Shown here in pieces: positions 4,543 to 64,000 of a DNA stretch of 64,000 bases. The position numbers were made by a program, and so were the translations under genes. How positions within the stretch are numbered: position 1 is the stretch's first letter; each line of letters opens with the position of its first letter. The stretch covers positions 310,001-374,000 of the forward strand of contig MCFH01000036.1 in assembly GCA_002104945.1 (NCBI GenBank), in the 5' to 3' direction. Under the pieces are notes generated by a model. It had not been told where the DNA came from. It saw nothing but the letters and a program-made list of their open reading frames with translations, and made no database searches. The DNA comes from Piromyces finnis finn (lineage: Eukaryota > Fungi > Neocallimastigomycota).

Positions 4543-4587
<45 letters not shown>

Positions 4588-41529: not shown

Positions 41530-43029
41530 ATGGATATTAAATTACCCGAAGCTTCAAAAATAAAGGTTATAGCAACTGGTATGTTTATCTAGAAATACTT
41601 TTTAAAAAAAAAATATATATATATATATATATTATAATTATGTCTAAAGATTTTCTTATTTTTAATTTCAATATGTTAGAAATAAAAAAAAAAAATAAAT
41701 AAATTAAACTTTTTTTTTTAATATTCATTCATAAAATAAATTATTTATAAACATAGCATATTATTAATTTATCATCATTAATAGTACAATATATATAATT
41801 AATTTCAATATTTTTGATATATTTTCATTACTTTATTTCAAATTTCAATGAATTTCATTTCTTTTTAACAATATTTATCATTTTAATTGTTTAATTTAAA
41901 TCTGGATAAATCAATATGATAAATTTTAATAAAAAAAATAAATAAATAATAAATGCATTTTAAAGATCTTGATGGTACATTATTAAATTCAAAGGGAAGA
42001 GTATCAGAAAGAAATAAAACAGTTATACGTAAAATTTTAGAAAAATATCCAGATATTCATTTTGTTATTGCTAGTGGCCGGGGTAGACCAGCAACTATGA
42101 GAGTTCGTCAAGACATAGGTATCATGGATAGACCAAATACAGAATCTATTTTATGTAATGGTTGTATAATATATGATTCCTGTGGTAATATATTATATCA
42201 GGAGCTTTTACCAAATGATCTTATACTTAAAATTCATAAAATTGTCCCTTCCCTTTCTGAATCTTGTTTTGAATATACATCAGGAGATGATGCTATCTTT
42301 TTTAAGGAAAAGTGGTCAAAATTTGCCCATGAAATGTATGATGAACAAACAATAACCGAAGATATGGATGAATTTTCAAAAAAAATCGAAGCTAATGAAA
42401 CCAAAATTAACAAAGTTTGTTTCATGGTATCTAAACCTTCAGAAATCAATGGTAAAAATCTAATAGTTATTGATAAAAAAAAATGAAAAAGAACAAGTAT
42501 AGAAGTATAGAATAAAGAAAGAAAGGGAAAAAAAGGATTATAAATAATTATTATTATAAATATAAATATTATTTAGAATAACAATTAGTAACCCTACTAT
42601 TTAAATCGTATATATAAATTATTATTAATATTTTTTTATCAACCTATATTTATATATAAATATATATCAATAAAATTATATATATATTAAGAAATTGTTG
42701 AAGCATTAGATAATTTAAAAAAAGAGTATAACATGGAATTATCTTATACAACACCTATTTTTATTGAATATATGCCATCCAACATCAACAAAGGATCAGG
42801 TTTAATTCATTTAATGAACATACTAAATGTTAAAAAGGAAGAAATCATTGCTTTTGGTGATGGAGGAAATGATTTTGAATTTCTTCAAAATGCTGGATGG
42901 CCGGTAGCTATGGCAAATGCTAATGAAAAATTAAAATCATATGCTTGTTTAATAACAAAATCAAATGAAGAAGATGGTGTAGCTGACCTATTAGAAAAAA
43001 TATTTCTTAAAGAAGAATTAATGAATTAA
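41530..43029 (+). CDS. Cof-type HAD-IIB phosphatase, copy 5 (exons 41530-41578, 41966-42451, 42692-43029)
   Basis: MDIKLPEASKIKVIAT-D|LDGTLL...ASGRGRP...KGSGL...AFGDGGND...SNEEDGVA. Confidence 0.92.
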
Positions 43030-43303
43030 CTAGTTTAAATTTTTTTTATCAACTTAAATGCATGTAAACTTTTTTTTTTTTTTGAGAAAAAAAAATAATT
43101 TCATTTTAATAAGAATTATTTATAAATTAATAAATTTTAAAATATATATTATTTAAATATTTAAATAGTGTAAATGAATCTTTTTTTTTTTTTTCTTCCT
43201 AAACTTAAAATAAGTTTAGAAAACTTTATTCCATATTTAAACTACTTTGTAAAATTGTATTTTTATGTTCAATGTGTATTTTTCTATACATACTGAGTAA
43301 TGT

Positions 43304-43313
43304 ATCACGTGAT
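43304..43313. promoter_or_regulatory. Second palindromic E-box ATCACGTGAT
   Basis: Identical to 7740-7749; lies between HAD copy 5 and CotH copy 2. Confidence 0.35.
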
Positions 43314-44750
43314 TTATAATATACACTCAAGTTTTTAAAAATACCCATGAATTTTGCGTAAAAAAAATACATATTAAATTATTTAGTAAATGCGGTGATA
43401 AGGCCTTTTCTTGAATAATAATAATAATAATTTAATAATCTTCATCAAGACAAGGAAAGGAAAGGAGTTATTTTATTATTTATATTAAAGTTACAAAAAT
43501 ATTTTTTTATATTTAATTTTTCCTTTTTATTTAATTTATTTTATTATTTTGATCATCCATGATTAAATTACTCATCAAATTTTAATAACCAATCTTTTAT
43601 ATTAATAGGAAAAATTATATACCAATTAATTTGAAACAGTAAATATCTTTAAAATTTATTTAAAAGAAAAAAAAAGCAGTTAATCTATAAAAGAAATATT
43701 TAAAATTAATAGTAAAAGAATTGATTTTTAAATGAATATTAAAATAATAAAAAATAAGCATTTATTTACAATGAATAAAACTATAAATAAATGACTTTTT
43801 TAAGTTACTTTGGTTGTTTCATAGAATAATACCAACACCTTTTGAATCATTTTGATATTAGTTGACATAAAATTATCATTTTGTGTATAAATTTTCCAGT
43901 CTTAAAAATCATATTAATTAAAGTTTTTAATTTATAATATATATTATATACAAAAATTCAAATTTAATATATTTATGATTTATATATAAAAAAGATAGGA
44001 CTTAAAAAAGGGGGGAAACTTTTTCATTAATTTTTAGACAAAAAAGCGATTTTTTTAAAAAAGGAAAATTAATATATTAATAGCAGTTAACAATATTAAA
44101 AAGAAAAAGAATTAATATAAAAATTGATTTCATTGGTTACGGCAAATATATTTAATAAAAAAAGGAAAAATAAAATAGATAAAAAAGTACAAATTAATTT
44201 ATATGGTTTAGGTATCTTTCTAATAAATATTATGATACTTATGATACAATAACTTTCAAAAAATTAAATGTTTTAATTGAAATTAATTAATAGGAATTTG
44301 GTATTGTATCATGTATATTTCTATATTGTTTATAATATACTGTAATATATTTTCATAATAAATTACAATTCTTGTTTATAATTTATATATAACACAAATT
44401 TATTTATAAATTCATAATGATTCATTTTATATATCAATTTTTATATATGCTACTATTTAATCATGTTATTTTGTTGTTGTTTCACTCCTAAAACATATTA
44501 AAAACTTTAATATATAATTAATAATTTCAAATATAGATAACAAATTTATATAAATAGGCTGCTTTTTTAAAAAAAAAAAAAAAAAAAAATTAAAAAGTAA
44601 AAAAAAAAAGTAAAATAAAATTATTAAAAAAAGTTGTTATATATATAATAAAGTAATATATATATCCAGCTATATATTTTAATTAATTTTGTTTTAGAGA
44701 AAAGAAATAATAAAAAGTTAAAAAAAATAATTTAATACAGCGAAAAAAAA

Positions 44751-46376
44751 ATGAAATCTTTATTATTTACAACTTTAATATTACTTTTAATTAATCTTAT
44801 CAATGCTCATTCTTATGAGTCACTTGGTATTGATGCTGTTCAAAAAAAGGAAACTGAAAAAATAATTGAGGATGAATCTCAATTCCCAGTTATTAATATT
44901 TCAACTAAAGATAATTCTGAATTAATTATTTCCAGAGAAAACTACACTGATAGTGTTGTTGATGTATTCAATATTGAAGATAAGTATAGATTAAAGGAAA
45001 GATCAGCAAGTGTTAAATTAAGAGGTAATTCTAGTAGTTTTTACGGTGATGTTAAAAAGGTATTAGCTAACCAAGTTCCATACAGAATTAAGTTCGATAA
45101 AAAGACCAATTTACTTGGCCTTCATGATGGTGAAAAGTTCAAGAACTGGGTTCTTCTTAAAATTGATGGTGACGTTATCAGAAATGATGTTGCTATTAGA
45201 ATGGGTAAAGTAATTTTCGATAAAAAATACTTTATCACTGATTCACATTTTGTCAAGCTCTACATCAATGATGTATTCAAAGGTATCTATTTACTCACTG
45301 AACATAACGAAATTGATGAAAAGAAAGTAAATATTTCCCAACCAGAAAAGAATTACAATGGCACTGATATTGGATACTATTTAGAACTTGATAACTATTT
45401 CTATGAAAACCCAGGAAAATACATTTCTCTTGATTATGAAAAAGCAACTGTTAAAGATATCAGAGGTGAAGAAAGAAAATTTGTTCCAGCTGAATATACA
45501 ATTAAAAATGATATATACTGTGAAGAACAATTATACTTTATTGGAAATTACACAAAGAATGTTTTCAATATTATTTACCAAGCTATTGAAAATGGTGAAT
45601 ACAAAACTTTTGATGAAGACTATAATCTTGTTAATTCTACTTTCACAAGTGTTGAAGAAACTATTTCAGCTGTATTTGATGTAGAATCTGCTGTTAATAC
45701 TTATCTTCTCTACGAAATTATTCATGATTATGATGTTGGTGAAGGTAGTTTCTTCTTTGCTGTTGATTTCTCTGAAAACAGTAAAATTAAGAAATTACAA
45801 ATGGTTTCTCCATGGGATTTCAACTGGGCTTACAGCGACAGTCCAAGAAGATACTGGGCTGGTGCTTTTTGTGATACAGCATTTGCTAAGAAATATGGTG
45901 ACAGAACAAATCCATGGTTTGTTTTACTTGCTAAAAACGATTGGTTCCATGAATTAGTCTCCAAAAAATGGGAAGGATTCTCTACTGCCATTAGAGCTCA
46001 ATTAGTTGAAGAAAATGCTTATCTTTACCAAAACTATAATGATGTTTTATTAGTTGGAAAATCTGTATTCAAAGGTGTTGATAATTTATACACTTGGATT
46101 AACAAAAGATTAGACTGGATTGATGAAGCTTTTGTTCCAGGAAAGAGTGCTTTACCAGTTCCAGATGAAAAGGATCCAGTTGTAACAACTACAACTAAAC
46201 CAGTTGAAACCACTCAACCAGTTGTTACCAAAACAACTACAGTTATTATCGAACCAACTATTGATGTTGAAACTACTGAATCAACTGAAATTGATTCCGA
46301 TGATGAACAAGAAGTTACAGCAGAAGCTGAAGAAGAACAAGATTCTGATTCTGAAGAAGAAGAAGAACAAGAATAA
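44751..46376 (+). CDS. Secreted CotH-family kinase-like protein, copy 2 (intronless; Thr/Pro-rich and acidic tail)
   Basis: Signal peptide; KLRGNSS, PYRIKFD, DVIRND, GIYLLTEH, HDYDVGEGSFFF, SPWDFN. Colinear paralogue of 13028-14650. Confidence 0.87.
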   Translation: MKSLLFTTLILLLINLINAHSYESLGIDAVQKKETEKIIEDESQFPVINISTKDNSELIISRENYTDSVVDVFNIEDKYRLKERSASVKLRGNSSSFYGDVKKVLANQVPYRIKFDKKTNLLGLHDGEKFKNWVLLKIDGDVIRNDVAIRMGKVIFDKKYFITDSHFVKLYINDVFKGIYLLTEHNEIDEKKVNISQPEKNYNGTDIGYYLELDNYFYENPGKYISLDYEKATVKDIRGEERKFVPAEYTIKNDIYCEEQLYFIGNYTKNVFNIIYQAIENGEYKTFDEDYNLVNSTFTSVEETISAVFDVESAVNTYLLYEIIHDYDVGEGSFFFAVDFSENSKIKKLQMVSPWDFNWAYSDSPRRYWAGAFCDTAFAKKYGDRTNPWFVLLAKNDWFHELVSKKWEGFSTAIRAQLVEENAYLYQNYNDVLLVGKSVFKGVDNLYTWINKRLDWIDEAFVPGKSALPVPDEKDPVVTTTTKPVETTQPVVTKTTTVIIEPTIDVETTESTEIDSDDEQEVTAEAEEEQDSDSEEEEEQE

Positions 46377-47600
46377 AGCTGTAAATAAAGGAAATTTTTA
46401 TATAAAGTTTTAAATAAATATATTCATAAATTTTGTAATAATTAAGTATAAATAATAATATAATTCAAATTAGCTTTTGATAAGTTAACCCTCCATAAAA
46501 TAAAAGAATCTAATAGAATAGAAAAAAAAAAAGCATTTTAAAAGAAAAAATATATAATTAAAGGAGGAAGTAAATAAATAAATATAAATAAATATGTTTA
46601 TTTAATTATTAATTGTAAATTAAAAAAATATTTTATAAAAAAAAAAACAAGAAAAAAATAAAAAATAATAAAAAAAATATTTAAGTTTAAATTTTTATTT
46701 TTAAAAATATTGTTTACTACTAATATTAAATAATAATTTCTAAATTCTAATAAAACAATTAAAAAAAAAAAATTGATCTACATGTAATAAATTAATAGAA
46801 AATATTAAATATAACCCAAAATGGTGTTAAATTTAACTCTCTTTTGGAGAATATGAATTAAATTACTATAATATATAATAAATAAATAAATTTTTTAATG
46901 GAATACATTTTTTAAATGAAATGATTCATTATTTCTATCTACAAGAAATTAATATTTTTTTTATCCTTTATGATGTTAAATGCTGGTAAAAAAAAAAAAG
47001 AATTTCATCTATCTTTCAATAAATATAATGTTGTTAAAAATAAATAATTGTTTTTATATTGTATAACTTATTTCTATAATAAAGAATATGTATAATAAAA
47101 ATCAAAATCTTTATAAAAATTTATATTAATTTATATAAAAAAAAAGGGGGTTATATTTAATCACTAGTTTTAAATCTTATTTAATACAGTTTAAAGATTG
47201 GAAAATAGAAAAATTAAATAAAAAATTATATATTAAATAAATAAATGAATTTGAAACTATAAAGAAGAAATTCAAAAGATGAAGAGTATACTTTAAATAA
47301 TAATGATAATTTTTATACTATTATATTTAAAAAAGTATTTTACCTTCAAATAAATCATCCATAAAATTGAATGTCCATAATTTAATAAATTAATTTCCCA
47401 TTTAGAATCAGAATTTTTAATATATTTAATTAATTAATTTTAATTAATTTTTTTAAAAAAAAATTTTCAAAATTTAATACTTCTATTATTAACCAATAGA
47501 AATTAACTTTTATTTTTACTATATAAAATTAACAATTATTAATTTTTTTTTATTTTTTTTTTGGTGAAACAAAGATTGAAGATTATCTTTTTAATAAATA

Positions 47601-47790
<190 letters not shown>

Positions 47791-48757
47791 AATGATATAA
47801 AAATAATATAGAAAATCATTTATAATTAATATAAATAATATATCATATATACCCATGCTTTATCTTTATTGAAGAGAAAAATTTTTTATTATTAAAAGGT
47901 TAGAAATGCTTTGCTGAAATATAAAAACATAAAGTTTAGTGTTATTGATAATTGTTTAGAAATGGTTTTTTTTTTTTTGGAAATTTTAGTAAAATTATCT
48001 AAAAATTATAATTTTACTAATTCAATTAATAATAATAACAATATTAATGTTAACAAAATTATTTATGAAAAAATATTGGAATTGATTTGGCAACACTTAT
48101 TCTCTCTCCAAAGATATTTTTTTTACTATGAAAAATTGATAATAGAGCAATGGCATAATGTTCAATGAATTAATCTTGGGAGATTATTTTCTAGTTAAAT
48201 CTTATTTAAATGTATATTTTCCAGTTAAAAAATTATGAGTCAGAAATATATATAATAGTATATTATATAGTTTTGATTTATTTGTTTGTTTTTAATATTT
48301 AAATTAATAGAAAATCTCATTGATTAATCATTAGTTATTATTATTGTTTATCCATTTCAATGAATAATAACTATTATAAAACGTATTTCAAACAAATATT
48401 AAAACTATTCAAAAAATTATAAAACTAAAAGCCAAAAAACGTATTAAAACTATTATAAAACTTTACATCCAAAAAATGGTTAAAATAATTATAAAATTTA
48501 TGGATGACTCAAAAAATTTTCCGCTATTAATAATCCAATTAGTAATTACTAATAAATATAATTTTTTTAATTTATTATTATAAATTATTATTTTTAAAAT
48601 TTTAAAATTTTTAATAAAATAGGAATTATCCATTTCAATAATTTTAAAAAAAAAAAAGAAAGTGTACATTGATTCTATAAGTTTTGATACTTTTTAATTT
48701 TATTAAAATAAATATAATAATTGTTATAATACACAAAATATTTTAATAATAAACAAG

Positions 48758-49928
48758 ATGACAACTGCACTACCTGATAAATCACAAATTAAACTTATCA
48801 CAACTGGTAATTGTCTTCACATTTAATGTTATTCTCATTATTATTATAAGTTATTAAATATTAAGTGTTTTAATATTTCTTTTCTTATATCCAAATAATA
48901 ATAATAAATAAATAATGCAATAAAGAATAAATTAATATATTAATATATTATTGTTAGTGATTAAAATGTAATAAAAGTAGTACCTCAATTAAAGTAAAAA
49001 TTCATTTATTTTTATTTTATTTTTTCTAATAAACGTATATTATTATAAACAAAGAAAAATAAATAAATTAAATAAAAAAAAAAAAAAAGTAATGTTATTT
49101 AATAATTATTTATCATTATTTCCCTATATTGAAAAAATATATATTTTCCAATTCACTTTTAACAATGGTTTTTGAAGTTCTTTTTTTATTTTATTTTATT
49201 ACTAAAATATTCAAAGTTAACATGTACTAGTAAAAGATATATATACTTGAAGATATAAACAGAAAAAAAATCTTGTTAATGTTATTCTTTTATTTCATTT
49301 TTCGAATTTATCTTTTCTTTATTATAAGAATATATATATTCCAAAAAAAAAAAAAAGTAACAAAAAAAGTAAAATAAAGTTATTATTTCTTTTATATTAT
49401 TTTAATTTATTTTAATAGACCTTGACGGTACCTTATTAGATTCAGAAGGAAATGTTTCAGAAAGAACTAGAACTGTTATTCGTAAAGTTTTAGAAAAATA
49501 TCCTGATCTTCATTTTGTATTGGCTAGTGGTAGAGCTAGACCAGCTACTATGGAAATTCGCGAAGCTCTTGGTATTTTAGATAGACCAAATACAGAATCT
49601 CTTCTTTGTAACGGTTGTATTATCTATGATTATCAGGGTAATATAGTATGGCAAAGTACTTTACCAAAAGAATTTGTTATTAAAGCCTATAATTTATTTA
49701 AAACCGATCCTACCTCCGTATATTTCTACTCAACGGGAGATGATGCTATTATGTTCAGTGAAAAATGGGCAAAGATATCTAGTGAACGTTACAAAGAACA
49801 TACTGTTCTTTCTGACAAGGAAGAATATATTAAAAAAGTCCAATCAGATAAAGTTAAAATTAATAAAATGTGTGCTATTGTTTCTGAAGGAAAAGATATT
49901 GAAAGTACGTTTTTTTTTTTATTGCTCA

Positions 49929-49967
<39 letters not shown>

Positions 49968-50391
49968 TTAAATATGTTATATATAAAAACACTGTTTATT
50001 AACAATATTGGGTCTTTATTTATATTATAATATATATTATTATATTGTTATTAAAAAATATAAAATAGAAATAAAACCTATTCTTTTGGAATATTGTAAA
50101 GAATATAATTTGGAATACGCTTATTCTACCTCATTCTTTTTAGAATTTATGCCACAAAACACCCATAAAGGTACAGCTTTAGAACAATTAATTAAAAATT
50201 TAAATATTAAAAAAGAAGAAGTATTAGCCTTTGGTGATGGTGGAAATGATATTAATCTTTTAAAGAGTTCTGGATGGCCAGTTGCTGTAGATAATGCATG
50301 TGACGAACTAAAATCCATAGCCAAAATAACTACTAAATCTAATGCTGAGGATGGTGTTGCCGATTTATTGGAAAGAATTTTCTTAAGCTAG
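48758..50391 (+). CDS. Cof-type HAD-IIB phosphatase, copy 6 (exons 48758-48806, 49419-49904, 50069-50391)
   Basis: MTTALPDKSQIKLITT-D|LDGTLL...ASGRARP...KGTAL...AFGDGGND...SNAEDGVA. Confidence 0.92.
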
Positions 50392-50870
50392 ATTTAAATC
50401 ATAATTATAATAAATAAATATATATATATATGATTTATTGATATTTAATTTTATAATAAAATTATCTAAAAAACATCTACATGATATATCATTAAAATTA
50501 ATTCCATATATCCTAAAACTATCCTACTAATTTTTATACTTCATACATTAAGTTAAATAAATTAAACACATTGACTATAAAATTGTAAAGATAAAAAAAT
50601 AAAAGCATGTTTATCAATAAAATTCGATGTAAATATTTTGTAAAATAATTATAAATACTAAATTTTTAAAGTCTTATTTCCAATATTTAAATATTATTAA
50701 TTAGCATATATTTATTTTCAAATATTATCATTAAAAATATATATTTTTAAAATTTATGAAGAAATAATAATACACATATACAAACATAATTTTAATAACT
50801 TATTATTTTTATTTTTAACTTTAGTTTTATTTTATTTTTTATTTATTTTATTTTTTATATCATTTTTTAA

Positions 50871-53800
50871 TATAAATATCTTATTTACTATTTATTTAAA
50901 CAATAAATAAAATACTTATAAACGTGTTTAATACTAAACCTACAGAACATAGCATAGTAAAAAAAGAGAAGTAAAGTATTAGAAGATATTTTTAGAAGTA
51001 ACTATTGCCATAGCTGTAGATTTATTATTAAAACAAGACAGCTTTTTCAATTCTTATAATTTAATAGAGATGAACATTGCTGTAACTGTCTTTTCATTAA
51101 TTAAGGGGATCCAAAAGTAACCAAAGGAGAATTCATTCTTCAATATTTTTTATATAAATATCTTATTTACTATTTATTTAAACAATAAATAAAATACTTA
51201 TAAATGTGTTTAATAATAAATCTACAGAACATAGCATAGTAAAAAGAGAAGTAAAGTATTAGAAGATATTTTTAGAAGTAACTATTGCCATAGCTGTAGA
51301 TTTATTATTAAAACAAGACAGCTTTTTCAATTCTTATAATTTAATAGAGATGAACATTGCTGTAACTGTCTTTTCATTAATTAAAGGGATCCAAAAGTAA
51401 CCAAAGGAGAATTCATTCTTCAATATTTTTTATTTTTTATATAAATATCTTATTTACTATTTATTTAAACAATAAATAAAATACTTATAAATGTGTTTAA
51501 TAATAAATCTACAGAACATAGCATAGTAAAAAAAGAGAAGTAAAGTATTAGAAGATATTTTTAGAAGTAACTATTGCCATAGCTGTAGATTTATTATTAA
51601 AACAAGACAGCTTTTTCAATTCTTATAATTTAATATAGATGAACATTGCTGTAACTGTCTTTTCATTAATTAAGGGGATCCAAAAGTAACCAAAGGAGAA
51701 TTCATTCTTCAATATTTTTTATATAAATATCTTATTTACTATTTATTTAAACAATAAATAAAATACTTATAAATGTGTTTAATAATAAATCTACAGAACA
51801 TAGCATAGTAAAAAAAGAGAAGTAAAGTATTAGAAGATATTTTTAGAAGTAACTATTGCCATAGCTGTAGATTTATTATTAAAACAAGACAGCTTTTTCA
51901 ATTCTTATAATTTTATAGAGATGAACATTGCTGTAACTGTCTTTTCATTAATTAAAGGGATCCAAAAGTAACCAAAGGAGAATTCATTCTTCAATATTTT
52001 TTATTTTTTATATAAATATCTTATTTACTATTTATTTAAACAATAAATAAAATACTTATAAATGTGTTTAATAATAAATCTACAGAACATAGCATAGTAA
52101 AAAAAGAGAAGTAAAGTATTAGAAGATATTTTTAGAAGTAACTATTGCCATAGCTGTAGATTTATTATTAAAACAAGACAGCTTTTTCAATTCTTATAAT
52201 TTTATAGAGATGAACATTGCTGTAACTGTCTTTTCATTAATTAAAGGGATCCAAAAGTAACCAAAGGAGAATTCATTCTTCAATATTTTTTATTTTTTAT
52301 ATAAATATCTTATTTACTATTTATTTAAACAATAAATAAAATACTTATAAATGTGTTTAATAATAAATCTACAGAACATAGCATAGTAAAAAAAGAGAAG
52401 TAAAGTATTAGAAGATATTTTTAGAAGTAACTATTGCCATAGCTGTAGATTTATTATTAAAACAAGACAGCTTTTTCAATTCTTATAATTTAATAGAGAT
52501 GAACATTGCTGTAACTGTCTTTTCATTAATTAAGGGGATCCAAAAGTAACCAAAGGAGAATTCATTCTTCAATATTTTTTATTTTTTATATAAATATCTT
52601 ATTTACTATTTATTTAAACAATAAATAAAATACTTATAAATGTGTTTAATAATAAATCTACAGAACATAGCATAGTAAAAAAAGAGAAGTAAAGTATTAG
52701 AAGATATTTTTAGAAGTAACTATTGCCATAGCTGTAGATTTATTATTAAAACAAGACAGCTTTTTCAATTCTTATAATTTTATAGAGATGAACATTGCTG
52801 TAACTGTCTTTTCATTAATTAAAGGGATCCAAAAGTAACCAAAGGAGAATTCATTCTTCAATATTTTTTATATAAATATCTTATTTACTATTTATGTAAA
52901 TAATAAATAAAATACTTATAAATGTGTTTAATACTAAACCTACAGAACATAGCATAGTAAAAAAAGAGAAGTAAAGTATTAGAAGATATTTTTAGAAGTA
53001 ACTATTGCCATAGCTGTAGATTTATTATTAAAACAAGACAGCTTTTTCAATTCTTATAATTTTATAGAGATGAACATTGCTGTAACTGTCTTTTCATTAA
53101 TTAAAGGGATCCAAAAGTAACCAAAGGAGAATTCATTCTTCAATATTTTTTATTTTTTATATAAATATCTTATTTACTATTTATTTAAACAATAAATAAA
53201 ATACTTATAAATGTGTTTAATAATAAATCTACAGAACATAGCATAGTAAAAAAAGAGAAGTAAAGTATTAGAAGATATTTTTAGAAGTAACTATTGCCAT
53301 AGCTGTAGATTTATTATTAAAACAAGACAGCTTTTTCAATTCTTATAATTTTATAGAGATGAACATTGCTGTAACTGTCTTTTCATTAATTAAAGGGATC
53401 CAAAAGTAACCAAAGGAGAATTCATTCTTCAATATTTTTTATATAAATATCTTATTTACTATTTATTTAAACAATAAATAAAATACTTATAAATGTGTTT
53501 AATAATAAATCTACAGAACATAGCATAGTAAAAAAAGAGAAGTAAAGTATTAGAAGATATTTTTAGAAGTAACTATTGCCATAGCTGTAGATTTATTATT
53601 AAAACAAGACAGCTTTTTCAATTCTTATAATTTAATAGAGATGAACATTGCTGTAACTGTCTTTTCATTAATTAAGGGGATCCAAAAGTAACCAAAGGAG
53701 AATTCATTCTTCAATATTTTTTATTTTATATAAATATCTTATTTACTATTTATTTAAACAATAAATAAAATACTTATAAACGTGTTTAATACTAAACCTA

Positions 53801-56800
53801 CAGAACATAGCATAGTAAAAAAAGAGAAGTAAAGTATTAGAAGATATTTTTAGAAGTAACTATTGCCATAGCTGTAGATTTATTATTAAAACAAGACAGC
53901 TTTTTCAATTCTTATAATTTAATAGAGATGAACATTGCTGTAACTGTCTTTTCATTAATTAAGGGGATCCAAAAGTAACCAAAGGAGAATTCATTCTTCA
54001 ATATTTTTTATTTTTTATATAAATATCTTATTTACTATTTATTTAAACAATAAATAAAATACTTATAAATGTGTTTAATAATAAATCTACAGAACATAGC
54101 ATAGTAAAAAAAGAGAAGTAAAGTATTAGAAGATATTTTTAGAAGTAACTATTGCCATAGCTGTAGATTTATTATTAAAACAAGACAGCTTTTTCAATTC
54201 TTATAATTTTATAGAGATGAACATTGCTGTAACTGTCTTTTCATTAATTAAAGGGATCCAAAAGTAACCAAAGGAGAATTCATTCTTCAATATTTTTTAT
54301 ATAAATATCTTATTTACTATTTATGTAAATAATAAATAAAATACTTATAAATGTGTTTAATACTAAACCTACAGAACATAGCATAGTAAAAAAAGAGAAG
54401 TAAAGTATTAGAAGATATTTTTAGAAGTAACTATTGCCATAGCTGTAGATTTATTATTAAAACAAGACAGCTTTTTCAATTCTTATAATTTTATAGAGAT
54501 GAACATTGCTGTAACTGTCTTTTCATTAATTAAAGGGATCCAAAAGTAACCAAAGGAGAATTCATTCTTCAATATTTTTTATTTTTTATATAAATATCTT
54601 ATTTACTATTTATTTAAACAATAAATAAAATACTTATAAATGTGTTTAATAATAAATCTACAGAACATAGCATAGTAAAAAAAGAGAAGTAAAGTATTAG
54701 AAGATATTTTTAGAAGTAACTATTGCCATAGCTGTAGATTTATTATTAAAACAAGACAGCTTTTTCAATTCTTATAATTTTATAGAGATGAACATTGCTG
54801 TAACTGTCTTTTCATTAATTAAAGGGATCCAAAAGTAACCAAAGGAGAATTCATTCTTCAATATTTTTTATATAAATATCTTATTTACTATTTATGTAAA
54901 TAATAAATAAAATACTTATAAATGTGTTTAATAATAAATCTACAGAACATAGCATAGTAAAAAAAGAGAAGTAAAGTATTAGAAGATATTTTTAGAAGTA
55001 ACTATTGCCATAGCTGTAGATTTATTATTAAAACAAGACAGCTTTTTCAATTCTTATAATTTTATAGAGATGAACATTGCTGTAACTGTCTTTTCATTAA
55101 TTAAAGGGATCCAAAAGTAACCAAAGGAGAATTCATTCTTCAATATTTTTTATTTTTTATATAAATATCTTATTTACTATTTATTTAAACAATAAATAAA
55201 ATACTTATAAATGTGTTTAATACTAAACCTACAGAACATAGCATAGTAAAAAAAGAGAAGTAAAGTATTAGAAGATATTTTTAGAAGTAACTATTGCCAT
55301 AGCTGTAGATTTATTATTAAAACAAGACAGCTTTTTCAATTCTTATAATTTTATAGAGATGAACATTGCTGTAACTGTCTTTTCATTAATTAAAGGGATC
55401 CAAAAGTAACCAAAGGAGAATTCATTCTTCAATATTTTTTATATAAATATCTTATTTACTATTTATTTAAACAATAAATAAAATACTTATAAATGTGTTT
55501 AATACTAAACCTACAGAACATAGCATAGTAAAAAAAGAGAAGTAAAGTATTAGAAGATATTTTTAGAAGTAACTATTGCCATAGCTGTAGATTTATTATT
55601 AAAACAAGACAGCTTTTTCAATTCTTATAATTTAATAGAGATGAACATTGCTGTAACTGTCTTTTCATTAATTAAGGGGATCCAAAAGTAACCAAAGGAG
55701 AATTCATTCTTCAATATTTTTTATTTTTTATATAAATATCTTATTTACTATTTATTTAAACAATAAATAAAATACTTATAAATGTGTTTAATAATAAATC
55801 TACAGAACATAGCATAGTAAAAAAAGAGAAGTAAAGTATTAGAAGATATTTTTAGAAGTAACTATTGCCATAGCTGTAGATTTATTATTAAAACAAGACA
55901 GCTTTTTCAATTCTTATAATTTTATAGAGATGAACATTGCTGTAACTGTCTTTTCATTAATTAAGGGGATCCAAAAGTAACCAAAGGAGAATTCATTCTT
56001 CAATATTTTTTATTTTTTATATAAATATCTTATTTACTATTTATTTAAACAATAAATAAAATACTTATAAATGTGTTTAATAATAAATCTACAGAACATA
56101 GCATAATAAAAAAAGAGAAGTAAAGTATTAGAAGATATTTTTAGAAGTAACTATTGCCATAGCTGTAGATTTATTATTAAAACAAGACAGCTTTTTCAAT
56201 TCTTATAATTTAATAGAGATGAACATTGCTGTAACTGTCTTTTCATTAATTAAGGGGATCCAAAAGTAACCAAAGGAGAATTCATTCTTCAATATTTTTT
56301 ATTTTTTATATAAATATCTTATTTACTATTTATTTAAACAATAAATAAAATACTTATAAATGTGTTTAATAATAAATCTACAGAACATAGCATAGTAAAA
56401 AAAGAGAAGTAAAGTATTAGAAGATATTTTTAGAAGTAACTATTGCCATAGCTGTAGATTTATTATTAAAACAAGACAGCTTTTTCAATTCTTATAATTT
56501 AATAGAGATGAACATTGCTGTAACTGTCTTTTCATTAATTAAGGGATCCAAAAGTAACCAAAGGAGAATTCATTCTTCAATATTTTTTATATAAATATCT
56601 TATTTACTATTTATTTAAACAATAAATAAAATACTTATAAATGTGTTTAATACTAAACCTACAGAACATAGCATAGTAAAAAAAGAGAAGTAAAGTATTA
56701 GAAGATATTTTTAGAAGTAACTATTGCCATAGCTGTAGATTTATTATTAAAACAAGACAGCTTTTTCAATTCTTATAATTTAATAGAGATGAACATTGCT

Positions 56801-59800
56801 GTAACTGTCTTTTCATTAATTAAGGGGATCCAAAAGTAACCAAAGGAGAATTCATTCTTCAATATTTTTTATATAAATATCTTATTTACTATTTATTTAA
56901 ACAATAAATAAAATACTTATAAATGTGTTTAATAATAAATCTACAGAACATAGCATAGTAAAAAAAGAGAAGTAAAGTATTAGAAGATATTTTTAGAAGT
57001 AACTATTGCCATAGCTGTAGATTTATTATTAAAACAAGACAGCTTTTTCAATTCTTATAATTTAATAGAGATGAACATTGCTGTAACTGTCTTTTCATTA
57101 ATTAAGGGGATCCAAAAGTAACCAAAGGAGAATTCATTCTTCAATATTTTTTATATAAATATCTTATTTACTATTTATTTAAACAATAAATAAAATACTT
57201 ATAAATGTGTTTAATAATAAATCTACAGAACATAGCATAGTAAAAAAAGAGAAGTAAAGTATTAGAAGATATTTTTAGAAGTAACTATTGCCATAGCTGT
57301 AGATTTATTATTAAAACAAGACAGCTTTTTCAATTCTTATAATTTAATAGAGATGAACATTGCTGTAACTGTCTTTTCATTAATTAAGGGATCCAAAAGT
57401 AACCAAAGGAGAATTCATTCTTCAATATTTTTTATTATATAAATATCTTATTTACTATTTATTTAAACAATAAATAAAATACTTATAAATGTGTTTAATA
57501 ATAAATCTACAGAACATAGCATAGTAAAAAAAGAGAAGTAAAGTATTAGAAGATATTTTTAGAAGTAACTATTGCCATAGCTGTAGATTTATTATTAAAA
57601 CAAGACAGCTTTTTCAATTCTTATAATTTATAGAGATGAACATTGCTGTAACTGTCTTTTCATTAATTAAGGGATCCAAAAGTAACCAAAGGAGAATTCA
57701 TTCTTCAATATTTTTATTTTTATATAAATATCTTATTTACTATTTATTTAAACAATAAATAAAATACTTATAAATGTGTTTAATAATAAATCTACAGAAC
57801 ATAGCATAGTAAAAAAAGAGAAGTAAAGTATTAGAAGATATTTTTAGAAGTAACTATTGCCATAGCTGTAGATTTATTATTAAAACAAGACAGCTTTTTC
57901 AATTCTTATAATTTAATAGAGATGAACATTGCTGTAACTGTCTTTTCATTAATTAAGGGATCCAAAAGTAACCAAAGGAGAATTCATTCTTCAATATTTT
58001 TTTATATAAATATCTTATTTACTATTTATTTAAACAATAAATAAAATACTTATAAATGTGTTTAATAATAAATCTACAGAACATAGCATAGTAAAAAAAG
58101 AGAAGTAAAGTATTAGAAGATATTTTTAGAAGTAACTATTGCCATAGCTGTAGATTTATTATTAAAACAAGACAGCTTTTTCAATTCTTATAATTTAATA
58201 GAGATGAACATTGCTGTAACTGTCTTTTCATTAATTAAGGGGATCCAAAAGTAACCAAAGGAGAATTCATTCTTCAATATTTTTTATTTTATATAAATAT
58301 CTTATTTACTATTTATTTAAACAATAAATAAAATACTTATAAATGTGTTTAATAATAAATCTACAGAACATAGCATAGTAAAAAAAGAGAAGTAAAGTAT
58401 TAGAAGATATTTTTAGAAGTAACTATTGCCATAGCTGTAGATTTATTATTAAAACAAGACAGCTTTTTCAATTCTTATAATTTAATAGAGATGAACATTG
58501 CTGTAACTGTCTTTTCATTAATTAAGGGGATCCAAAAGTAACCAAAGGAGAATTCATTCTTCAATATTTTTATTTATATAAATATCTTATTTACTATTTA
58601 TTTAAACAATAAATAAAATACTTATAAATGTGTTTAATAATAAATCTACAGAACATAGCATAGTAAAAAAAGAGAAGTAAAGTATTAGAAGATATTTTTA
58701 GAAGTAACTATTGCCATAGCTGTAGATTTATTATTAAAACAAGACAGCTTTTTCAATTCTTATAATTTAATAGAGATGAACATTGCTGTAACTGTCTTTT
58801 CATTAATTAAGGGGATCCAAAAGTAACCAAAGGAGAATTCATTCTTCAATATTTTTTTATATAAATATCTTATTTACTATTTATTTAAACAATAAATAAA
58901 ATACTTATAAATGTGTTTAATAATAAATCTACAGAACATAGCATAGTAAAAAAAGAGAAGTAAAGTATTAGAAGATATTTTTAGAAGTAACTATTGCCAT
59001 AGCTGTAGATTTATTATTAAAACAAGACAGCTTTTTCAATTCTTATAATTTATAGAGATGAACATTGCTGTAACTGTCTTTTCATTAATTAAGGGATCCA
59101 AAAGTAACCAAAGGAGAATTCATTCTTCAATATTTTTATTTTATATAAATATCTTATTTACTATTTATTTAAACAATAAATAAAATACTTATAAATGTGT
59201 TTAATAATAAATCTACAGAACATAGCATAATAAAAAAAGAGAAGTAAAGTATTAGAAGATATTTTTAGAAGTAACTATTGCCATAGCTGTAGATTTATTA
59301 TTAAAACAAGACAGCTTTTTCAATTCTTATAATTTAATAGAGATGAACATTGCTGTAACTGTCTTTTCATTAATTAAGGGGATCCAAAAGTAACCAAAGG
59401 AGAATTCATTCTTCAATATTTTTTATATAAATATCTTATTTACTATTTATTTAAACAATAAATAAAATACTTATAAATGTGTTTAATAATAAATCTACAG
59501 AACATAGCATAGTAAAAAAAGAGAAGTAAAGTATTAGAAGATATTTTTAGAAGTAACTATTGCCATAGCTGTAGATTTATTATTAAAACAAGACAGCTTT
59601 TTCAATTCTTATAATTTTATAGAGATGAACATTGCTGTAACTGTCTTTTCATTAATTAAAGGGATCCAAAAGTAACCAAAGGAGAATTCATTCTTCAATA
59701 TTTTTTATTTTTATATAAATATCTTATTTACTATTTATTTAAACAATAAATAAAATACTTATAAATGTGTTTAATAATAAATCTACAGAACATAGCATAG

Positions 59801-61195
59801 TAAAAAAAGAGAAGTAAAGTATTAGAAGATATTTTTAGAAGTAACTATTGCCATAGCTGTAGATTTATTATTAAAACAAGACAGCTTTTTCAATTCTTAT
59901 AATTTAATAGAGATGAACATTGCTGTAACTGTCTTTTCATTAATTAAGGGGATCCAAAAGTAACCAAAGGAGAATTCATTCTTCAATATTTTTTATTTTA
60001 TATAAATATCTTATTTACTATTTATTTAAACAATAAATAAAATACTTATAAATGTGTTTAATAATAAATCTACAGAACATAGCATAGTAAAAAAAGAGAA
60101 GTAAAGTATTAGAAGATATTTTTAGAAGTAACTATTGCCATAGCTGTAGATTTATTATTAAAACAAGACAGCTTTTTCAATTCTTATAATTTAATAGAGA
60201 TGAACATTGCTGTAACTGTCTTTTCATTAATTAAGGGGATCCAAAAGTAACCAAAGGAGAATTCATTCTTCAATATTTTTTATATAAATATCTTATTTAC
60301 TATTTATTTAAACAATAAATAAAATACTTATAAATGTGTTTAATAATAAATCTACAGAACATAGCATAGTAAAAAAAGAGAAGTAAAGTATTAGAAGATA
60401 TTTTTAGAAGTAACTATTGCCATAGCTGTAGATTTATTATTAAAACAAGACAGCTTTTTCAATTCTTATAATTTAATAGAGATGAACATTGCTGTAACTG
60501 TCTTTTCATTAATTAAGGGGATCCAAAAGTAACCAAAGGAGAATTCATTCTTCAATATTTTTTATATAAATATCTTATTTACTATTTATTTAAACAATAA
60601 ATAAAATACTTATAAATGTGTTTAATACTAAACCTACAGAACATAGCATAGAAAAAAAAGAGAAGTAAAGTATTAGAAGATATTTTTAGAAGTAACTATT
60701 GCCATAGCTGTAGATTTATTATTAAAACAAGACAGCTTTTTCAATTCTTATAATTTAATAGAGATGAACATTGCTGTAACTGTCTTTTCATTAATTAAGG
60801 GGATCCAAAAGTAACCAAAGGAGAATTCATTCTTCAATATTTTTTATATAAATATCTTATTTACTATTTATTTAAACAATAAATAAAATACTTATAAATG
60901 TGTTTAATAATAAATCTACAGAACATAGCATAGTAAAAAAAGAGAAGTAAAGTATTAGAAGATATTTTTAGAAGTAACTATTGCCATAGCTGTAGATTTA
61001 TTATTAAAACAAGACAGCTTTTTCAATTCTTATAATTTAATAGAGATGAACATTGCTGTAACTGTCTTTTCATTAATTAAGGGGATCCAAAAGTAACCAA
61101 AGGAGAATTCATTCTTCAATGTTTTTTATTTTTTATATAAATATCTTATTTACTATTTATTTAAACAATAAATAAAATACTTATAAATATGTTTA
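50871..61195. repeat. Tandem array of 36 near-identical ~282-289 bp units plus a partial 37th
   Basis: 36 GGATCC sites counted, from ~51107 to ~61083 (mean spacing ~285). Each unit also has one GAATTC. Units differ by a few shared SNPs and a ~7 nt indel. Confidence 0.97.
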
Positions 61196-61750
61196 AAACT
61201 AAATAAAATGATTTTTAATAAAATAAAGATGTTTTTGAAAAATTTTGAAAAAAGTAAGAGTTTAAATACTTTTTTTTTCTCAATTATATAATTATTATTT
61301 TTCAAATGATTATATTAATATTAAATGGTATTTTGTGAAAATAAAATTAAAATAAATATAAGCCACAAACTTTAAATCCTATTTTCTAAATTTTATTTAT
61401 TCAATTGGTTATGTTAATAAATAAAGATGATATTTTTAATGGTTAAAAAAAATGAAAATTATTATGAACCACAAACTTAAAAATTAATACCATTAACCAC
61501 AACATAATTAAATTTAATTTATATTAATGTAATGTATATGTAATAAGATATAATGTAAATTTAATGGTAATGTAAATGTATGATACATATAATTTTTTCA
61601 TTATAACTATAGGTTTTTTTTTTAATTTTTTATTTTTAAATTAAAAGGGTTAAAAAATATTTAAAAAAAATGCAAATTTTAAAGAGTTAATAAAGAAGTT
61701 AGGATGTAAGGATATTTTTATATTATTTAAATTTATAAAAAAAAAACATA

Positions 61751-62016
61751 AAACATAGAATATAATAGCATTTTTATAATTAAAAATATTTTTGATAATA
61801 AAAATAACAAATATTTAATTCAAGTTAATAAAATTAAAAGCATAGAATATAATAGTGTTTTTATAATGAAAAATGTTTTTGATAATAAAAATAACAAATA
61901 TTTAATTCAAGTTAATAAAATTAAAAGCATAGAATATAATAGTGTTTTTATAATGAAAAATGTTTTTGATAATAAAAAAAAACAAATATTTAATTCAAAT
62001 TAATAAAATTAAAAAG
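61751..62016. repeat. 87 bp tandem repeat x3
   Basis: CATAGAATATAATAG recurs at 61754, 61841 and 61928. Confidence 0.9.
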
Positions 62017-64000
62017 CTTTATTTATTATATGAATTCAATTATTTTATTTTATTTTATTTTATATTTTTTTGAATATCTATTCTGAAAGATGTTAATATA
62101 AAATATTTTTCAAAATAAAGTTCAAGTATAAAAGAAAGTTTTTTTTATCTTTTTCAAACTACTGTTGTTAAAAGAAATCTATTAACATTTATAGTTTTTT
62201 TTTGAATTGATTTATTAAATCTTAAATTCTTAATCTTGCATATTTTAATATTAAACAATTTACTTTTATGAGTTTTTTTCATTAAAATCACAATTAATAA
62301 ATGCAAAGATTATTAAATTTTTAAAAAAAAAATTATAGAGTTAAAATATTTTATATTTTATATCTTATTACTTTTGATATTTTTAATTTAAAAATAACAC
62401 AATATTATAATTAGTTTTTTTTTCTTTTCTTTTTTAAAGAAAACAATTTTATTTCTTTCAAGTTATTATTTTTTTGTGATTATTTTTTATTTTAATTTTT
62501 TTAATAATTATTTTAGTTATTTCTCAGTATTAATAATAATTTTAACTTATTAATTTTTAAATTGAACTTTATTAGGAAAACAGTTATCAATACCTAAAAA
62601 CCTTATTTAATAATATAATTGAATATTACTATAAATGTTATATAAACATAAATTAATGTAATATTGGAATAGATTATAATGTAGTTTTTTAGTACATTTT
62701 ATTTAGTACATTAGTGTATTTATCATATTTTTATAATCATGTGATAAATTAAAGTATTTATAGTATTTAATATAAACAGTTAAACAAACTTTATAGTTAG
62801 ATTTTGGTATAAATTAGTAGAAAATATAGTAAATTAGTCTCTATCTAAGAATATAATAGTTAGGAGAAGATATTCTTAAGATCATATAATATTAAGTATG
62901 TATTTGAATAATTTATAAATAAAGTATATAAGTCAACTCACAAATCCTGAGTGTATTGAACCGAGTTGTATCAAATACTAATAAAAATATATTAAATTCT
63001 AATTTTAAATGAGCTAATGCATGTAAAAAATATGTATTGCTTAATCAAGCAAATTGGACAAATATATTTATATATCAATTAACAATTAATCTAATTCATA
63101 ATATTTTATTAACTATTTTTTTAAAAGAAATAGAGAACTAGTATTTTTCTTTTTTTTTTTTTTGTTTTAATTTTTATGTACCTTTTTTTTTTCTTTTCCT
63201 TTTTTTTTTTATAAGAATAGAGTATTCATTTTATTCATTAATCATTTATATTTTTTAAAAGTTGATGCACTTTTCATTTTAAATTGAAATTATAAAATTG
63301 TTACACAACAATTTCTAATTAAATTTAATAATTAAATGAATACATATAAAGATTAAGTAGATCTATTAATTTATATAAATGAATGTATTATTATTTATAT
63401 TAATAAATAATTAATATTAAATAAAAACATAAAAACTTTAAAACTTTAAATAGTCATTACCAAAAAATAAATAAATAAATAAATAAATAAATGAATTTTA
63501 AATATTTAATTAATTAAAATTAATGAATATATTTAATAAATAAATAAATAAATAATAATAAAATTAATTATTAGAATTTTAAAAACAATTAAAGCGTTCA
63601 ATTGATTTAAATACATTTAAATATTTTATTTATTTATTTAAATACTATTTATACTTATTTTAATTAAAAAAAAAAATTAATTAAAAAGAAATGATTAAAA
63701 AAGGAAATCTTTTTTGTAATTAAAAGTCATATTTTCATCAGTGTAAAACGGTAGAACGCTGAATAAATAGTATTAAAATCTTTATTCTATTTTTATTTCT
63801 ATAGATGGTTAATACCCATGAAATAATTATAACCAACTAAATAAGTAACCTATAAACTAAAAAAGTAGTAATATTCAAAGTACTTTGCAATAAATATGCT
63901 TTTTAAATAGTATTGTATTTATGGATTCCATTTAATTAAATATATTTAATTAAATATTAATTTTTTTTATATTAATAGGATATAAAAGGAAATCTTTTAT

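What the first reader, a model, noticed from the sequence alone, without database searches (positions are those of the whole stretch)
50871..61195. 10.3 kb array of 36 units, each with three hairpins including a 19 bp perfect inverted repeat
In unit 5, TTTAATAATAAATCTACAG (52067-85) pairs perfectly with CTGTAGATTTATTATTAAA (52154-72) across 68 nt, with further imperfect pairing inside (ATAGT/ACTAT). A second stem, AAGACAG (52175-81)/CTGTCTT (52226-32), encloses CAGC/GCTG and TTCA/TGAA. A third AT stem is TATTTATT/AATAAATA. Most of the unit is self-complementary, the units are nearly identical, and no long ORF exists. Candidates: a small-RNA (hairpin/siRNA) precursor array, a cruciform-forming centromeric or heterochromatic satellite, or an amplified MITE/Helitron internal repeat. 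I do not recognise the unit.
Basis: partly seen in the sequence, partly recalled or inferred. Interest (0 to 1): 0.78.

Follow-up and report, generated by a model that had tools for sequence, protein, structure and literature searches.

The report
Amplified array of conserved hairpin modules
A gut fungus (Piromyces finnis) carries 36 near-identical tandem copies of a 285-base non-coding module whose three hairpins are also kept at the same genomic spot in a related fungus, so it is probably a multiplied gene for a folded (hairpin) RNA and not just junk satellite DNA, although no expression data could be obtained.

Summary
Window 50866-61204 is a head-to-tail array of 36.3 units of 280-289 bp (97% matches). 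It lies in Piromyces finnis contig MCFH01000036.1, 475 bp 3' of a HAD-hydrolase gene. The stated stems are at the stated coordinates. The unit has no ORF, no tRNA and no Rfam match.

New here:
- A metagenome contig from a related fungus (L010) carries at least two diverged copies of the same module 3' of the orthologous HAD gene.
- Between the species the hairpin arms are 84-94% identical. Loops, spacer and the HAD intron are about 50%.
Wobble-type positions favour the minus strand about 12:1.
- The 30-pair central hairpin keeps 27 pairs in the relative, with one compensatory change.

My best reading (about 0.4) is an old structured-RNA module read from the minus strand. It was amplified in P. 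finnis by unequal exchange and is plausibly a Dicer-substrate hairpin array; these fungi have Dicer and Argonaute but no RdRP.

Rivals are a neutral satellite, a DNA-level palindrome function, and a transposon-derived repeat.

Limits: only one relative was found. The scan had not noted this sequence elsewhere.

The parts
50866..61204 (-). Whole tandem array: 36.3 head-to-tail units of 280-289 bp, about 21.6% GC. The strand given is the inferred RNA strand.
   Evidence: TRF; 36 exact anchors; covariance model R1 hits all 36 units on the minus strand at 165-176 bits.
52000..52288 (-).
   Evidence: Sequence. RNA folds: plus strand -51.8 kcal/mol, z -2.85; minus strand -64.0, z -5.68. Native-background test.
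52011..52060 (-). HP3: 23-bp helix with four G.U pairs and a 4-nt loop, minus strand only. Its 5' arm is the conserved block AATAAATAAAATACTTATAAA (plus-strand spelling).
   Evidence: Minus strand -18.5 kcal/mol, z -6.72; plus strand -3.0, z +0.23. The same 50-mer occurs in 34 copies. The relative L010:3103-3162 keeps a 13+10-bp helix, z -4.87.
52064..52176 (-). HP2: central hairpin. The outer stem is 19 bp (52067-85 with 52154-72) and perfect in 28 of 36 units. The inner stem is 7+4 bp and the loop about 42 nt. That makes 30 pairs on the minus strand and 28 on the plus strand.
   Evidence: Folds z -8.08 (minus) and -6.15 (plus). Pair table. Right arm invariant in all 36 units. Arms are 84-94% identical to L010 and the loop 49%.
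52175..52232 (-). HP1: AAGACAG/CTGTCTT outer stem (9 pairs on the minus strand) with an inner CAGC/GCTG-type stem. A T5 run lies in its loop on the plus strand.
   Evidence: Folds. Arms invariant in 36 units. L010 copy A keeps 9 of 9 outer pairs, with A-U changed to U-A at the closing pair.
52233..52299 (-). Spacer or 'tail' (TTCATTAATTAAGGGGATCCAAAAGTAACCAAAGGAGAATTCATTCTTCAATA) plus a T tract whose length sets the 282 and 289 unit classes.
   Evidence: Variable columns 43-50 lie in the T tract. The tail is 53% identical to L010 copy B; it looks closer to copy A by eye (GGATTCTAAAGTA motif; not quantified).
49421..50391 (+). Context: HAD-superfamily (Cof-type, Hydrolase_3) gene whose stop codon lies 475 bp upstream of the array. 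It is convergent with the inferred minus-strand RNA.
   Evidence: Called gene and Pfam in L001. The orthologue in L010 has exons about 85% identical and the intron 53%.
61205..64000 (.). Right flank: unique, AT-rich (14-18% GC), no ORF of 60 aa or more. It would hold the promoter if the array is read as one minus-strand transcript.
   Evidence: ORF list. No repeat of the flanks elsewhere in the window.

Best explanation
The unit is an old, non-coding, three-hairpin module (HP1-HP2-HP3, read 5' to 3' on the minus strand). It already lay 3' of this HAD gene in the common ancestor of P. finnis and a related Piromyces-like fungus.

In P. finnis it was multiplied to 36 nearly identical tandem copies by unequal exchange or replication slippage, and it is kept homogeneous by the same process.

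The hairpins are under purifying selection in a pattern that fits a folded RNA transcribed from the minus strand, convergent with the HAD gene.

The most likely role is a hairpin-RNA source locus. HP2 is a 30-bp near-perfect duplex and HP3 a 23-bp duplex, and each is a natural Dicer substrate. Anaerobic gut fungi have Dicer and Argonaute but lack an RNA-dependent RNA polymerase, so fold-back transcripts are one of the few ways they can make double-stranded RNA.

Shown here: the array, the folds, the orthologous copies, and the conservation pattern.

Inferred: transcription, the transcribed strand, Dicer processing, and any target.
For: 1. Orthology. L010, a JGI metagenome contig, has a HAD gene whose exons are about 85% identical to the P. 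finnis gene. It carries the module about 1.1 kb 3' of that gene (BLAST E 9e-19; covariance model 108 bits, E 5e-22).

2. Selection. Identity between P. finnis and L010 copy B is 88% in the block before HP2 and 84-94% in three of the four HP2 arm segments (62% in the left inner one). It is 49-53% in the HP2 loop, HP1 loop and tail. The neutral yardsticks are the HAD intron at 53% and the 3' UTR at 60%. Arms against loops: 57/68 versus 56/111, Fisher p = 6e-6.

3. Structure kept.
- HP2 has 30/30 pairs in P. finnis and 27/30 in L010. One change is compensatory (C-G to U-A) and three are one-sided changes that remain paired.
- HP3 is a 23-bp helix in both species, although the distal half of its 3' arm has diverged.
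- HP1 of L010 copy A keeps 9/9 outer pairs, with an A-U to U-A swap.
- On the model-fitted alignment, 53 pairs are 99.4% paired. Seven pairs changed on both sides, against 0.4 in shuffles and 0-2 in slid controls.

4. Strand. On the minus strand 53/53 and 49/53 pairs form; on the plus strand 47 and 45. By my hand count from the pair tables, about 12 of 13 wobble-type positions, within and between species, pair only on the minus strand (binomial p = 0.003). HP3 folds at -18.5 against -3.0 kcal/mol.

5. Within the array, three of five stem substitutions keep minus-strand pairing.

6. RNAi context. Dicer, Argonaute, QDE-3 and QIP are present and RdRP is absent in four anaerobic-fungus genera, including Piromyces (PMC5796279).

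7. Precedent. The Drosophila hp-CG4068 tandem hairpin-RNA cluster has 20, 9, 14 or 10 copies in sister species (PMC10317233).
Against:
- Only one divergent relative was found, so the covariation rests on one lineage. Part of the double-change count in HP3 comes from a one-base register shift.
- In L010 each copy is partly decayed. Copy A lacks recognisable HP2 and HP3, and copy B has a broken HP1 (7 of 9 pairs). This argues against strong constraint on every copy.
- Eight of 36 units carry an uncompensated A>C in HP2.
- A whole-unit energy difference between strands of this size occurs in 15% of background segments.
- No Rfam family matches.
- No promoter or terminator can be named.
- No target-like complementarity was found in the 75 kb of P. 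finnis DNA available.
Confidence: 0.4

Rival explanations
1. An ordinary, functionless satellite. A stretch of intergenic DNA that happened to contain palindromes was tandemly duplicated. The palindromes may have favoured slippage. The array drifts under unequal crossing-over.
For: Units are 97-99% identical, with the more divergent copies at the two array edges. There are local sub-variants and T-tract length classes. All of this is typical of concerted evolution. There is no ORF and no Rfam hit, and no second copy was found in the fungal DNA that could be searched. Eight units carry a stem-breaking change. The copies in the relative are partly decayed.
Against: It does not explain why the arms are 84-94% identical between species while loops, spacer and an intron are about 50%. 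It also does not explain why HP3 stays a 23-bp helix after its arm diverged, or why wobble positions favour one strand about 12:1.
Confidence: 0.28
2. A DNA-level element. The dyad symmetries would be binding sites for a dimeric protein, or cruciform or hairpin-forming sites serving a centromere, a replication origin or a chromatin boundary.
For: The strongest conservation is of arm sequence, not only of pairing: one 35-nt block has two changes and one 16-nt block has none. Dyad symmetries are a known feature of centromeric satellites (PMC5889037). A gene-poor AT-rich stretch and nested LINEs follow the array.
Against: The 19-bp repeat has a 68-nt spacer, which is unfavourable for cruciform extrusion (established knowledge). 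Folding the unit as DNA gives only z -2.2. HP3 needs G.U pairs and is absent on the plus strand. The array is 475 bp from an intact gene. Centromere satellites would be expected on many contigs, and none was seen, though the genome could not be scanned.
Confidence: 0.1
3. A transposon-derived tandem repeat: a MITE with 19-bp terminal inverted repeats, a SINE-like retroposon with 3' hairpins and an A-rich tail on the minus strand, or an internal repeat of a larger element.
For: This genome is reported by earlier scan notes to amplify transposon RNA hairpins into arrays (s1-185490, s1-173558; unchecked). On the minus strand the unit ends in an A-rich tract after HP3. The conserved-arms, variable-interior pattern also fits terminal inverted repeats.
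Against: There is no target-site duplication around the repeat in either species. No dispersed copy or relic was found in the window, L006, or the related loci, even with the covariance model. There is no similarity to the 3' end of the resident LINE. The flanks are unique. The syntenic position in two species fits an orthologous locus better than insertions.
Confidence: 0.12

Closest known systems
Drosophila tandem hairpin-RNA (hpRNA) clusters, e.g. hp-CG4068 (PMC10317233)
   Same: Both are head-to-tail repeats in which each unit folds into a long near-perfect hairpin. In both, copy number changes radically between close species: 20/9/14/10 in flies, 36 versus at least 2 here. Both hosts make endogenous dsRNA without RdRP.
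   Different: The fly clusters are shown to be one transcript, diced by Dcr-2, with known targets. Here neither a transcript, small RNAs nor a target is known. Each unit here has three hairpins, not one. There is no sequence relation.
Tandem microRNA gene arrays (zebrafish miR-430, primate C19MC; named from my own knowledge) and fungal miRNA-like RNAs
   Same: Many tandem copies of a hairpin unit. Arms are conserved more than loops.
   Different: HP2 (30 bp with a 42-nt loop) and HP3 (23 bp, all A-U or G.U) are not typical animal pre-miRNAs. No mature species is known.
Classical satellite DNA with dyad symmetry (PMC5889037)
   Same: Non-coding, AT-rich unit of 282-289 bp in a homogenised head-to-tail array with internal inverted repeats.
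   Different: The array is only 10.3 kb at a single known locus beside genes. The module is conserved at an orthologous site in another species, whereas satellites usually turn over quickly. Its best helix exists only at RNA level.
Ribozyme-bearing transcribed satellites (newt satellite 2, Schistosoma Sm-alpha, cave-cricket pDo500; named from my own knowledge)
   Same: A satellite whose unit encodes a structured RNA.
   Different: No hammerhead or other ribozyme family was detected by Rfam, even at E <= 10. There is no CUGANGA core in the unit.
Transposon-derived hairpin arrays noted in this genome by earlier scan agents (s1-185490, s1-190312)
   Same: Same organism, and tandem repeats of an RNA-type stem-loop.
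   Different: Those have units of about 90 nt or six units, inside or beside retroelements. This unit shows no similarity to any transposon available to me.

Membership tests
Satellite DNA | Long head-to-tail array of a non-coding unit with high inter-unit identity | tested here: met
   36.3 copies, 97% matches, no ORF.
Satellite DNA | High genomic abundance, multiple arrays, heterochromatic or centromeric location | not testable with these tools
   The whole P. finnis assembly cannot be searched by DNA. Only this one 10.3-kb locus is known. There is no copy in the other 54 kb of the window or in L006.
Hairpin-RNA (hpRNA) or miRNA-like small-RNA precursor locus | Fold-back with a duplex of 21 bp or more that is much more stable than chance | tested here: met
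   HP2 has 30 pairs, z -8.1. HP3 has 23 pairs, z -6.7.
Hairpin-RNA (hpRNA) or miRNA-like small-RNA precursor locus | Arms conserved more than loop in related species | tested here: met
   Most arm segments 84-94% (left inner arm 62%) against loops 49-50%; pooled 57/68 vs 56/111, Fisher p 6e-6. Only one relative was available.
Hairpin-RNA (hpRNA) or miRNA-like small-RNA precursor locus | Transcribed, with 20-25-nt Dicer-dependent small RNAs from the arms | not testable with these tools
Hairpin-RNA (hpRNA) or miRNA-like small-RNA precursor locus | Complementarity to a target gene or transposon | tested here: inconclusive
   No match with 3 or fewer mismatches to HP2 or HP1 arms in 75 kb of P. 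finnis DNA. The rest of the genome was not searchable.
MITE / DNA-transposon derivative | Terminal inverted repeats flanked by a target-site duplication | tested here: not met
   The inverted repeat is present, but the flanks are GTG...ACA in P. finnis and ATA...ATT in L010, which are not direct repeats.
MITE / DNA-transposon derivative | Dispersed copies | tested here: inconclusive
   None in the window, L006 or the related loci. A genome-wide search was not possible.
Known RNA families (Rfam 15: snRNA, snoRNA, SRP, RNase P/MRP, ribozymes, miRNA) | Covariance-model match at the gathering score | tested here: not met
   0 hits at gathering score on the window. At E <= 10 there was only a chance preQ1-II hit at 17 bits against a cut-off of 47.
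tRNA-derived SINE / tRNA gene array | tRNA-like fold | tested here: not met
   ARAGORN found 0 genes.
Centromeric dyad-symmetry satellite | Short (<10 bp) closely spaced dyads able to extrude cruciforms, and CENP-A occupancy | tested here: inconclusive
   The DNA fold gives only z -2.2. The main repeat has a 68-nt spacer. Chromatin could not be tested.

The most novel reading that the evidence does not exclude
The array is an endogenous hairpin-RNA factory of an RdRP-less early-diverging fungus. It would be read from the minus strand as one long transcript of 36 three-hairpin modules. Dicer would cut this into abundant siRNA- or miRNA-like RNAs from the conserved HP2 and HP3 arms, which would act in trans or, through convergent transcription, on the neighbouring HAD gene. 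It would be the first such locus described in Neocallimastigomycota.
Probability: 0.22. Interest if true: 0.72.

Novelty: new variant of a known kind. Interest (0 to 1): 0.5.

Why it matters
Nothing is known about endogenous small or structured RNAs in anaerobic gut fungi, and the papers searched here describe no satellite or non-coding RNA locus for them.

These fungi have Dicer and Argonaute but no RdRP. Genomic fold-back loci should therefore be a main source of their endogenous double-stranded RNA.

This locus is a concrete candidate that can be tested directly. It has a defined strand, defined arms and a second-species copy.

It also shows that a satellite-looking array can be the recent expansion of an older, constrained module. 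That bears on how hairpin-RNA clusters and satellites arise from each other.

If it proves untranscribed, it is still a clean example of a young, locus-specific satellite in a phylum whose repeats are unstudied.

Tried and rejected
- **Protein coding.** Rejected. The longest consistent ATG ORF is 16 aa and stop-free runs are at most 69 aa.
- **Known RNA family or tRNA.** No match.
- **Similarity of the unit to anything else in the window.** Only AT-rich noise at about 60% identity. No exact match of 17 nt or more.
- **Origin from the resident L1-like LINE's 3' end (SINE-LINE idea).** No similarity.
- **Relic copies beside the paralogous HAD genes.** None found with covariance model R1 with filters off.
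- **Metagenome scans.** The 23-mer anchor gave 0 hits. The 20-mer gave 3 chance hits in 44%-GC contigs, each sharing only 25 nt. One viral-contig scan gave 0 hits.
- **Piromyces sp. E2 syntenic locus (L005).** The spot 3' of the orthologous HAD is a 1763-N assembly gap, so it is uninformative.
- **Other loci.** A second relative (L017, 2.3 kb downstream of its HAD) and the Neocallimastix californiae HAD cluster (L022) have no detectable module. The CotH-neighbour contig L007 is not syntenic.
- **Marginal model hit at L009:4383-4483.** It is an unrelated perfect 20-bp palindrome.
- **Bacterial promoter and terminator scan.** Irrelevant and empty.
- **Whole-unit strand difference in folding energy.** Not unusual against background: 15% of segments differ as much. 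The strand call therefore rests on the individual helices and wobble positions.
- **HAD gene searches.** The gene was searched by its first exon only, by reference.
Full report
**What is there**

The window is very AT-rich (12-34% GC per 2 kb). It encodes CotH kinases, HAD hydrolases, a TPR protein and an L1-like LINE.

An exact protein look-up places the window in Piromyces finnis: GCA_002104945.1, contig MCFH01000036.1 (567,928 bp), record positions 300,001-364,000. This agrees with earlier scan notes that name an anaerobic gut fungus.

Tandem Repeats Finder reports one large array at 50866-61204: period 282, 36.3 copies, 97% matches. A 28-nt anchor occurs exactly 36 times, spaced 280-289 bp.

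Units fall into 282- and 289-bp classes that differ by a TTTTATT insertion in a T tract. Only 21 of 289 columns vary. The first copy (left edge) and the truncated last copy differ most from the consensus. The left half of the array is dominated by one sub-variant and the right half by another. This pattern is typical of unequal exchange.

The 19-bp inverted repeat is perfect in 28 units. Eight units have A>C and T>C in the left arm, while the right arm is invariant in all 36.

**Is it more than chance?**

Yes.
- The unit folds better than dinucleotide shuffles: z -2.85 on the plus strand and -5.68 on the minus strand.
- It also folds better than real GC-matched 289-nt segments of the same window. 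The plus strand is at the 2.3rd percentile, and the minus strand is beyond all 88 segments.
- It has no coding capacity, no tRNA and no Rfam match, even at E <= 10.
- Nothing else in the window resembles it, and its flanks are unique.

**Context**

The array starts 475 bp after the stop codon of a HAD (Hydrolase_3) gene on the plus strand, at 49421-50391. It is followed by 2.8 kb of ORF-free AT-rich DNA.

**A related copy**

I searched for the neighbouring genes' orthologues and fetched their contigs.

The Piromyces sp. E2 locus is syntenic (HAD-HAD-HAD-CotH-HAD). However, it has a 1763-N gap exactly where the array would be.

A closer look at HAD orthologues found a JGI metagenome contig, L010 (Ga0187902_10074129, 3443 bp). 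Its HAD exons are about 85% identical to those of P. finnis. About 1.1 kb 3' of that gene lies a sequence homologous to the unit (BLAST E 9e-19; covariance model 108 bits, E 5e-22).

Reading the contig shows at least two diverged tandem copies about 444 bp apart:
- Copy A keeps HP1 (TAGACAG...GCTGTAACTGTCTA) and the GGATTCTAAAGTA tail, but has a collapsed HP2.
- Copy B keeps HP3 and HP2, but has a damaged HP1.

The module, and probably its tandem state, therefore predate the split of the two fungi. P. finnis expanded it.

**Conservation pattern**

Neutral divergence between the two fungi is essentially saturated: the HAD intron is 53% identical and the 3' UTR 60%.

Within the module:

| Region | Identity to L010 copy B |
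|---|---|
| Block before HP2 | 88% |
| HP2 outer arms | 89% and 84% |
| HP2 right inner arm | 94% |
| HP2 left inner arm | 62% |
| HP2 loop | 49% |
| HP1 loop | 50% |
| Tail | 53% |

Arms against loops gives 57/68 versus 56/111, Fisher p = 6e-6. This is the signature of constraint on the stems.

**Structure and strand**

For the 30 pairs of HP2, the minus strand forms 30 (P. finnis major type), 29 (the eight-unit variant) and 27 (L010). The plus strand forms 28, 26 and 25. One pair shows a compensatory C-G to U-A change, and three show one-sided changes that remain paired (two of them only as G.U on the minus strand).

HP3 is the clearest case.
- In P. finnis the minus strand makes a 23-bp helix with four G.U pairs (-18.5 kcal/mol, z -6.7). 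The plus strand has no structure (-3.0, z +0.2).
- In L010 the same place makes a 13+10-bp helix on the minus strand (-15.3, z -4.9). This holds although the distal half of the 3' arm is only about half identical.

RNAalifold recovers the same three hairpins on the minus strand.

I built a covariance model of HP2+HP3 (R1) and aligned all 36 units and L010 to it.
- The 53 pairs are 99.4% paired.
- Seven pairs changed on both sides, against 0.4 in shuffles and 0-2 when partners are slid.
- That alignment is fitted to the model, and a one-base register shift in HP3 inflates the double changes.

Counting wobble-type positions within and between species (my hand count from the pair tables), about 12 pair only on the minus strand and one only on the plus strand (binomial p = 0.003).

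The whole-unit energy difference between strands is not in itself unusual.

I read all this as moderate evidence for an RNA read from the minus strand, convergent with the HAD gene.

**Distribution**

R1, with filters off, finds no further copy in any of these:
- the other 51 kb of the window;
- the E2 locus, a second P. finnis locus, and other metagenome relatives;
- the Neocallimastix californiae HAD cluster.

Two metagenome scans and one viral scan with P. finnis-type words found nothing real.

**Mechanism**

I commit to the following, with steps marked.
- Shown: an old three-hairpin module whose stems are constrained.
- Shown: amplification to 36 homogenised copies in P. finnis.
- Inferred: transcription from the minus strand, either as one precursor from the right flank or per unit.
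- Inferred: processing of the 30-bp HP2 and 23-bp HP3 duplexes by Dicer.

The last step is plausible for two reasons. Anaerobic gut fungi encode Dicer, Argonaute, QDE-3 and QIP homologues but no RdRP (PMC5796279), so fold-back transcripts are an obvious dsRNA source. Tandem hairpin-RNA clusters with rapid copy-number change are also known in Drosophila, where hp-CG4068 has 20/9/14/10 copies (PMC10317233).

No target was found in the 75 kb of P. finnis DNA I could search.

**Rivals**

- A neutral satellite explains the array dynamics, the eight imperfect units and the decaying copies in the relative. It does not explain the arm/loop contrast, the kept helices or the strand bias.
- A DNA-level palindrome function (protein binding, centromere, origin; compare PMC5889037) explains sequence conservation of the arms. 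It fits poorly with a 68-nt spacer, a weak DNA fold and an RNA-only HP3.
- A transposon origin lacks target-site duplications, dispersed copies and similarity to the local LINE. A genome-wide search was not possible.

**Limits**

- Only one relative exists in the data I could reach.
- The HAD gene was searched by its first exon, by reference, and not as a joined model.

**Verdict**

It is not an ordinary satellite on present evidence, but a recently expanded, evolutionarily constrained hairpin module of unknown product. I class it as a new variant of known tandem hairpin-RNA and satellite systems. Interest is moderate, pending RNA data.

Noticed in passing
window 62207-62302 and L005:20597-20689: A 96-nt non-coding block 1 kb right of the array is 77% identical to Piromyces sp. 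E2 (E 2.6e-11). In E2 a GT8 glycosyltransferase gene (L005:17227-18462) lies between the HAD gene and this block. That gene is absent from the P. finnis window (tblastn finds nothing). The array therefore occupies the place where E2 has GT8.
   Followed up: partly
window 61749-62014: A second, small tandem repeat: 87-bp unit, 3.1 copies, 95% matches. It lies in the array's right flank and is unrelated to the 285-bp unit.
   Followed up: no
window 47603-47790: A long (TTTA)46 microsatellite between the CotH and HAD genes. A- or T-runs of 40-67 nt also occur at 4544, 27330, 34220, 44569, 49928 and 63144.
   Followed up: no
window 8288-14650 and 41953-50391: The HAD-CotH gene pairs are duplicated in the window: HAD 8288-8860 with CotH 13028-14650, and HAD 41953-42486 with CotH 44751-46376 and HAD 49421-50391. 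They flank the inverted LRR/LINE region that other notes describe. Only the last HAD copy has the array.
   Followed up: partly
L009:4390-4433: In the relative's longer contig, a perfect 20-bp palindrome (CATTTGGGATATGGAGAACAAAATTTTGTTCTCCATATCCCAAAG) sits about 320 nt 3' of another HAD paralogue and is followed by a long A run. It is unrelated in sequence to the module but is another hairpin 3' of a HAD gene.
   Followed up: no
L010:2541-2613: A T run of about 70 nt between the HAD gene and the module in the relative. Most of the metagenome contigs fetched for this locus (L011-L016) end at or near this tract, which is why only one contig reaches the module.
   Followed up: partly
L005 (Piromyces sp. 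E2, KZ150773.1): Every intergenic region of this 22-kb stretch is an N run: seven gaps of 665-2004 N. The E2 assembly cannot be used to judge non-coding elements.
   Followed up: yes
L009 versus window 41953-50391: The relative has three HAD genes in a row but no CotH gene between the second and third. P. finnis and Piromyces sp. E2 both have CotH there, so CotH was gained or lost at this locus.
   Followed up: no
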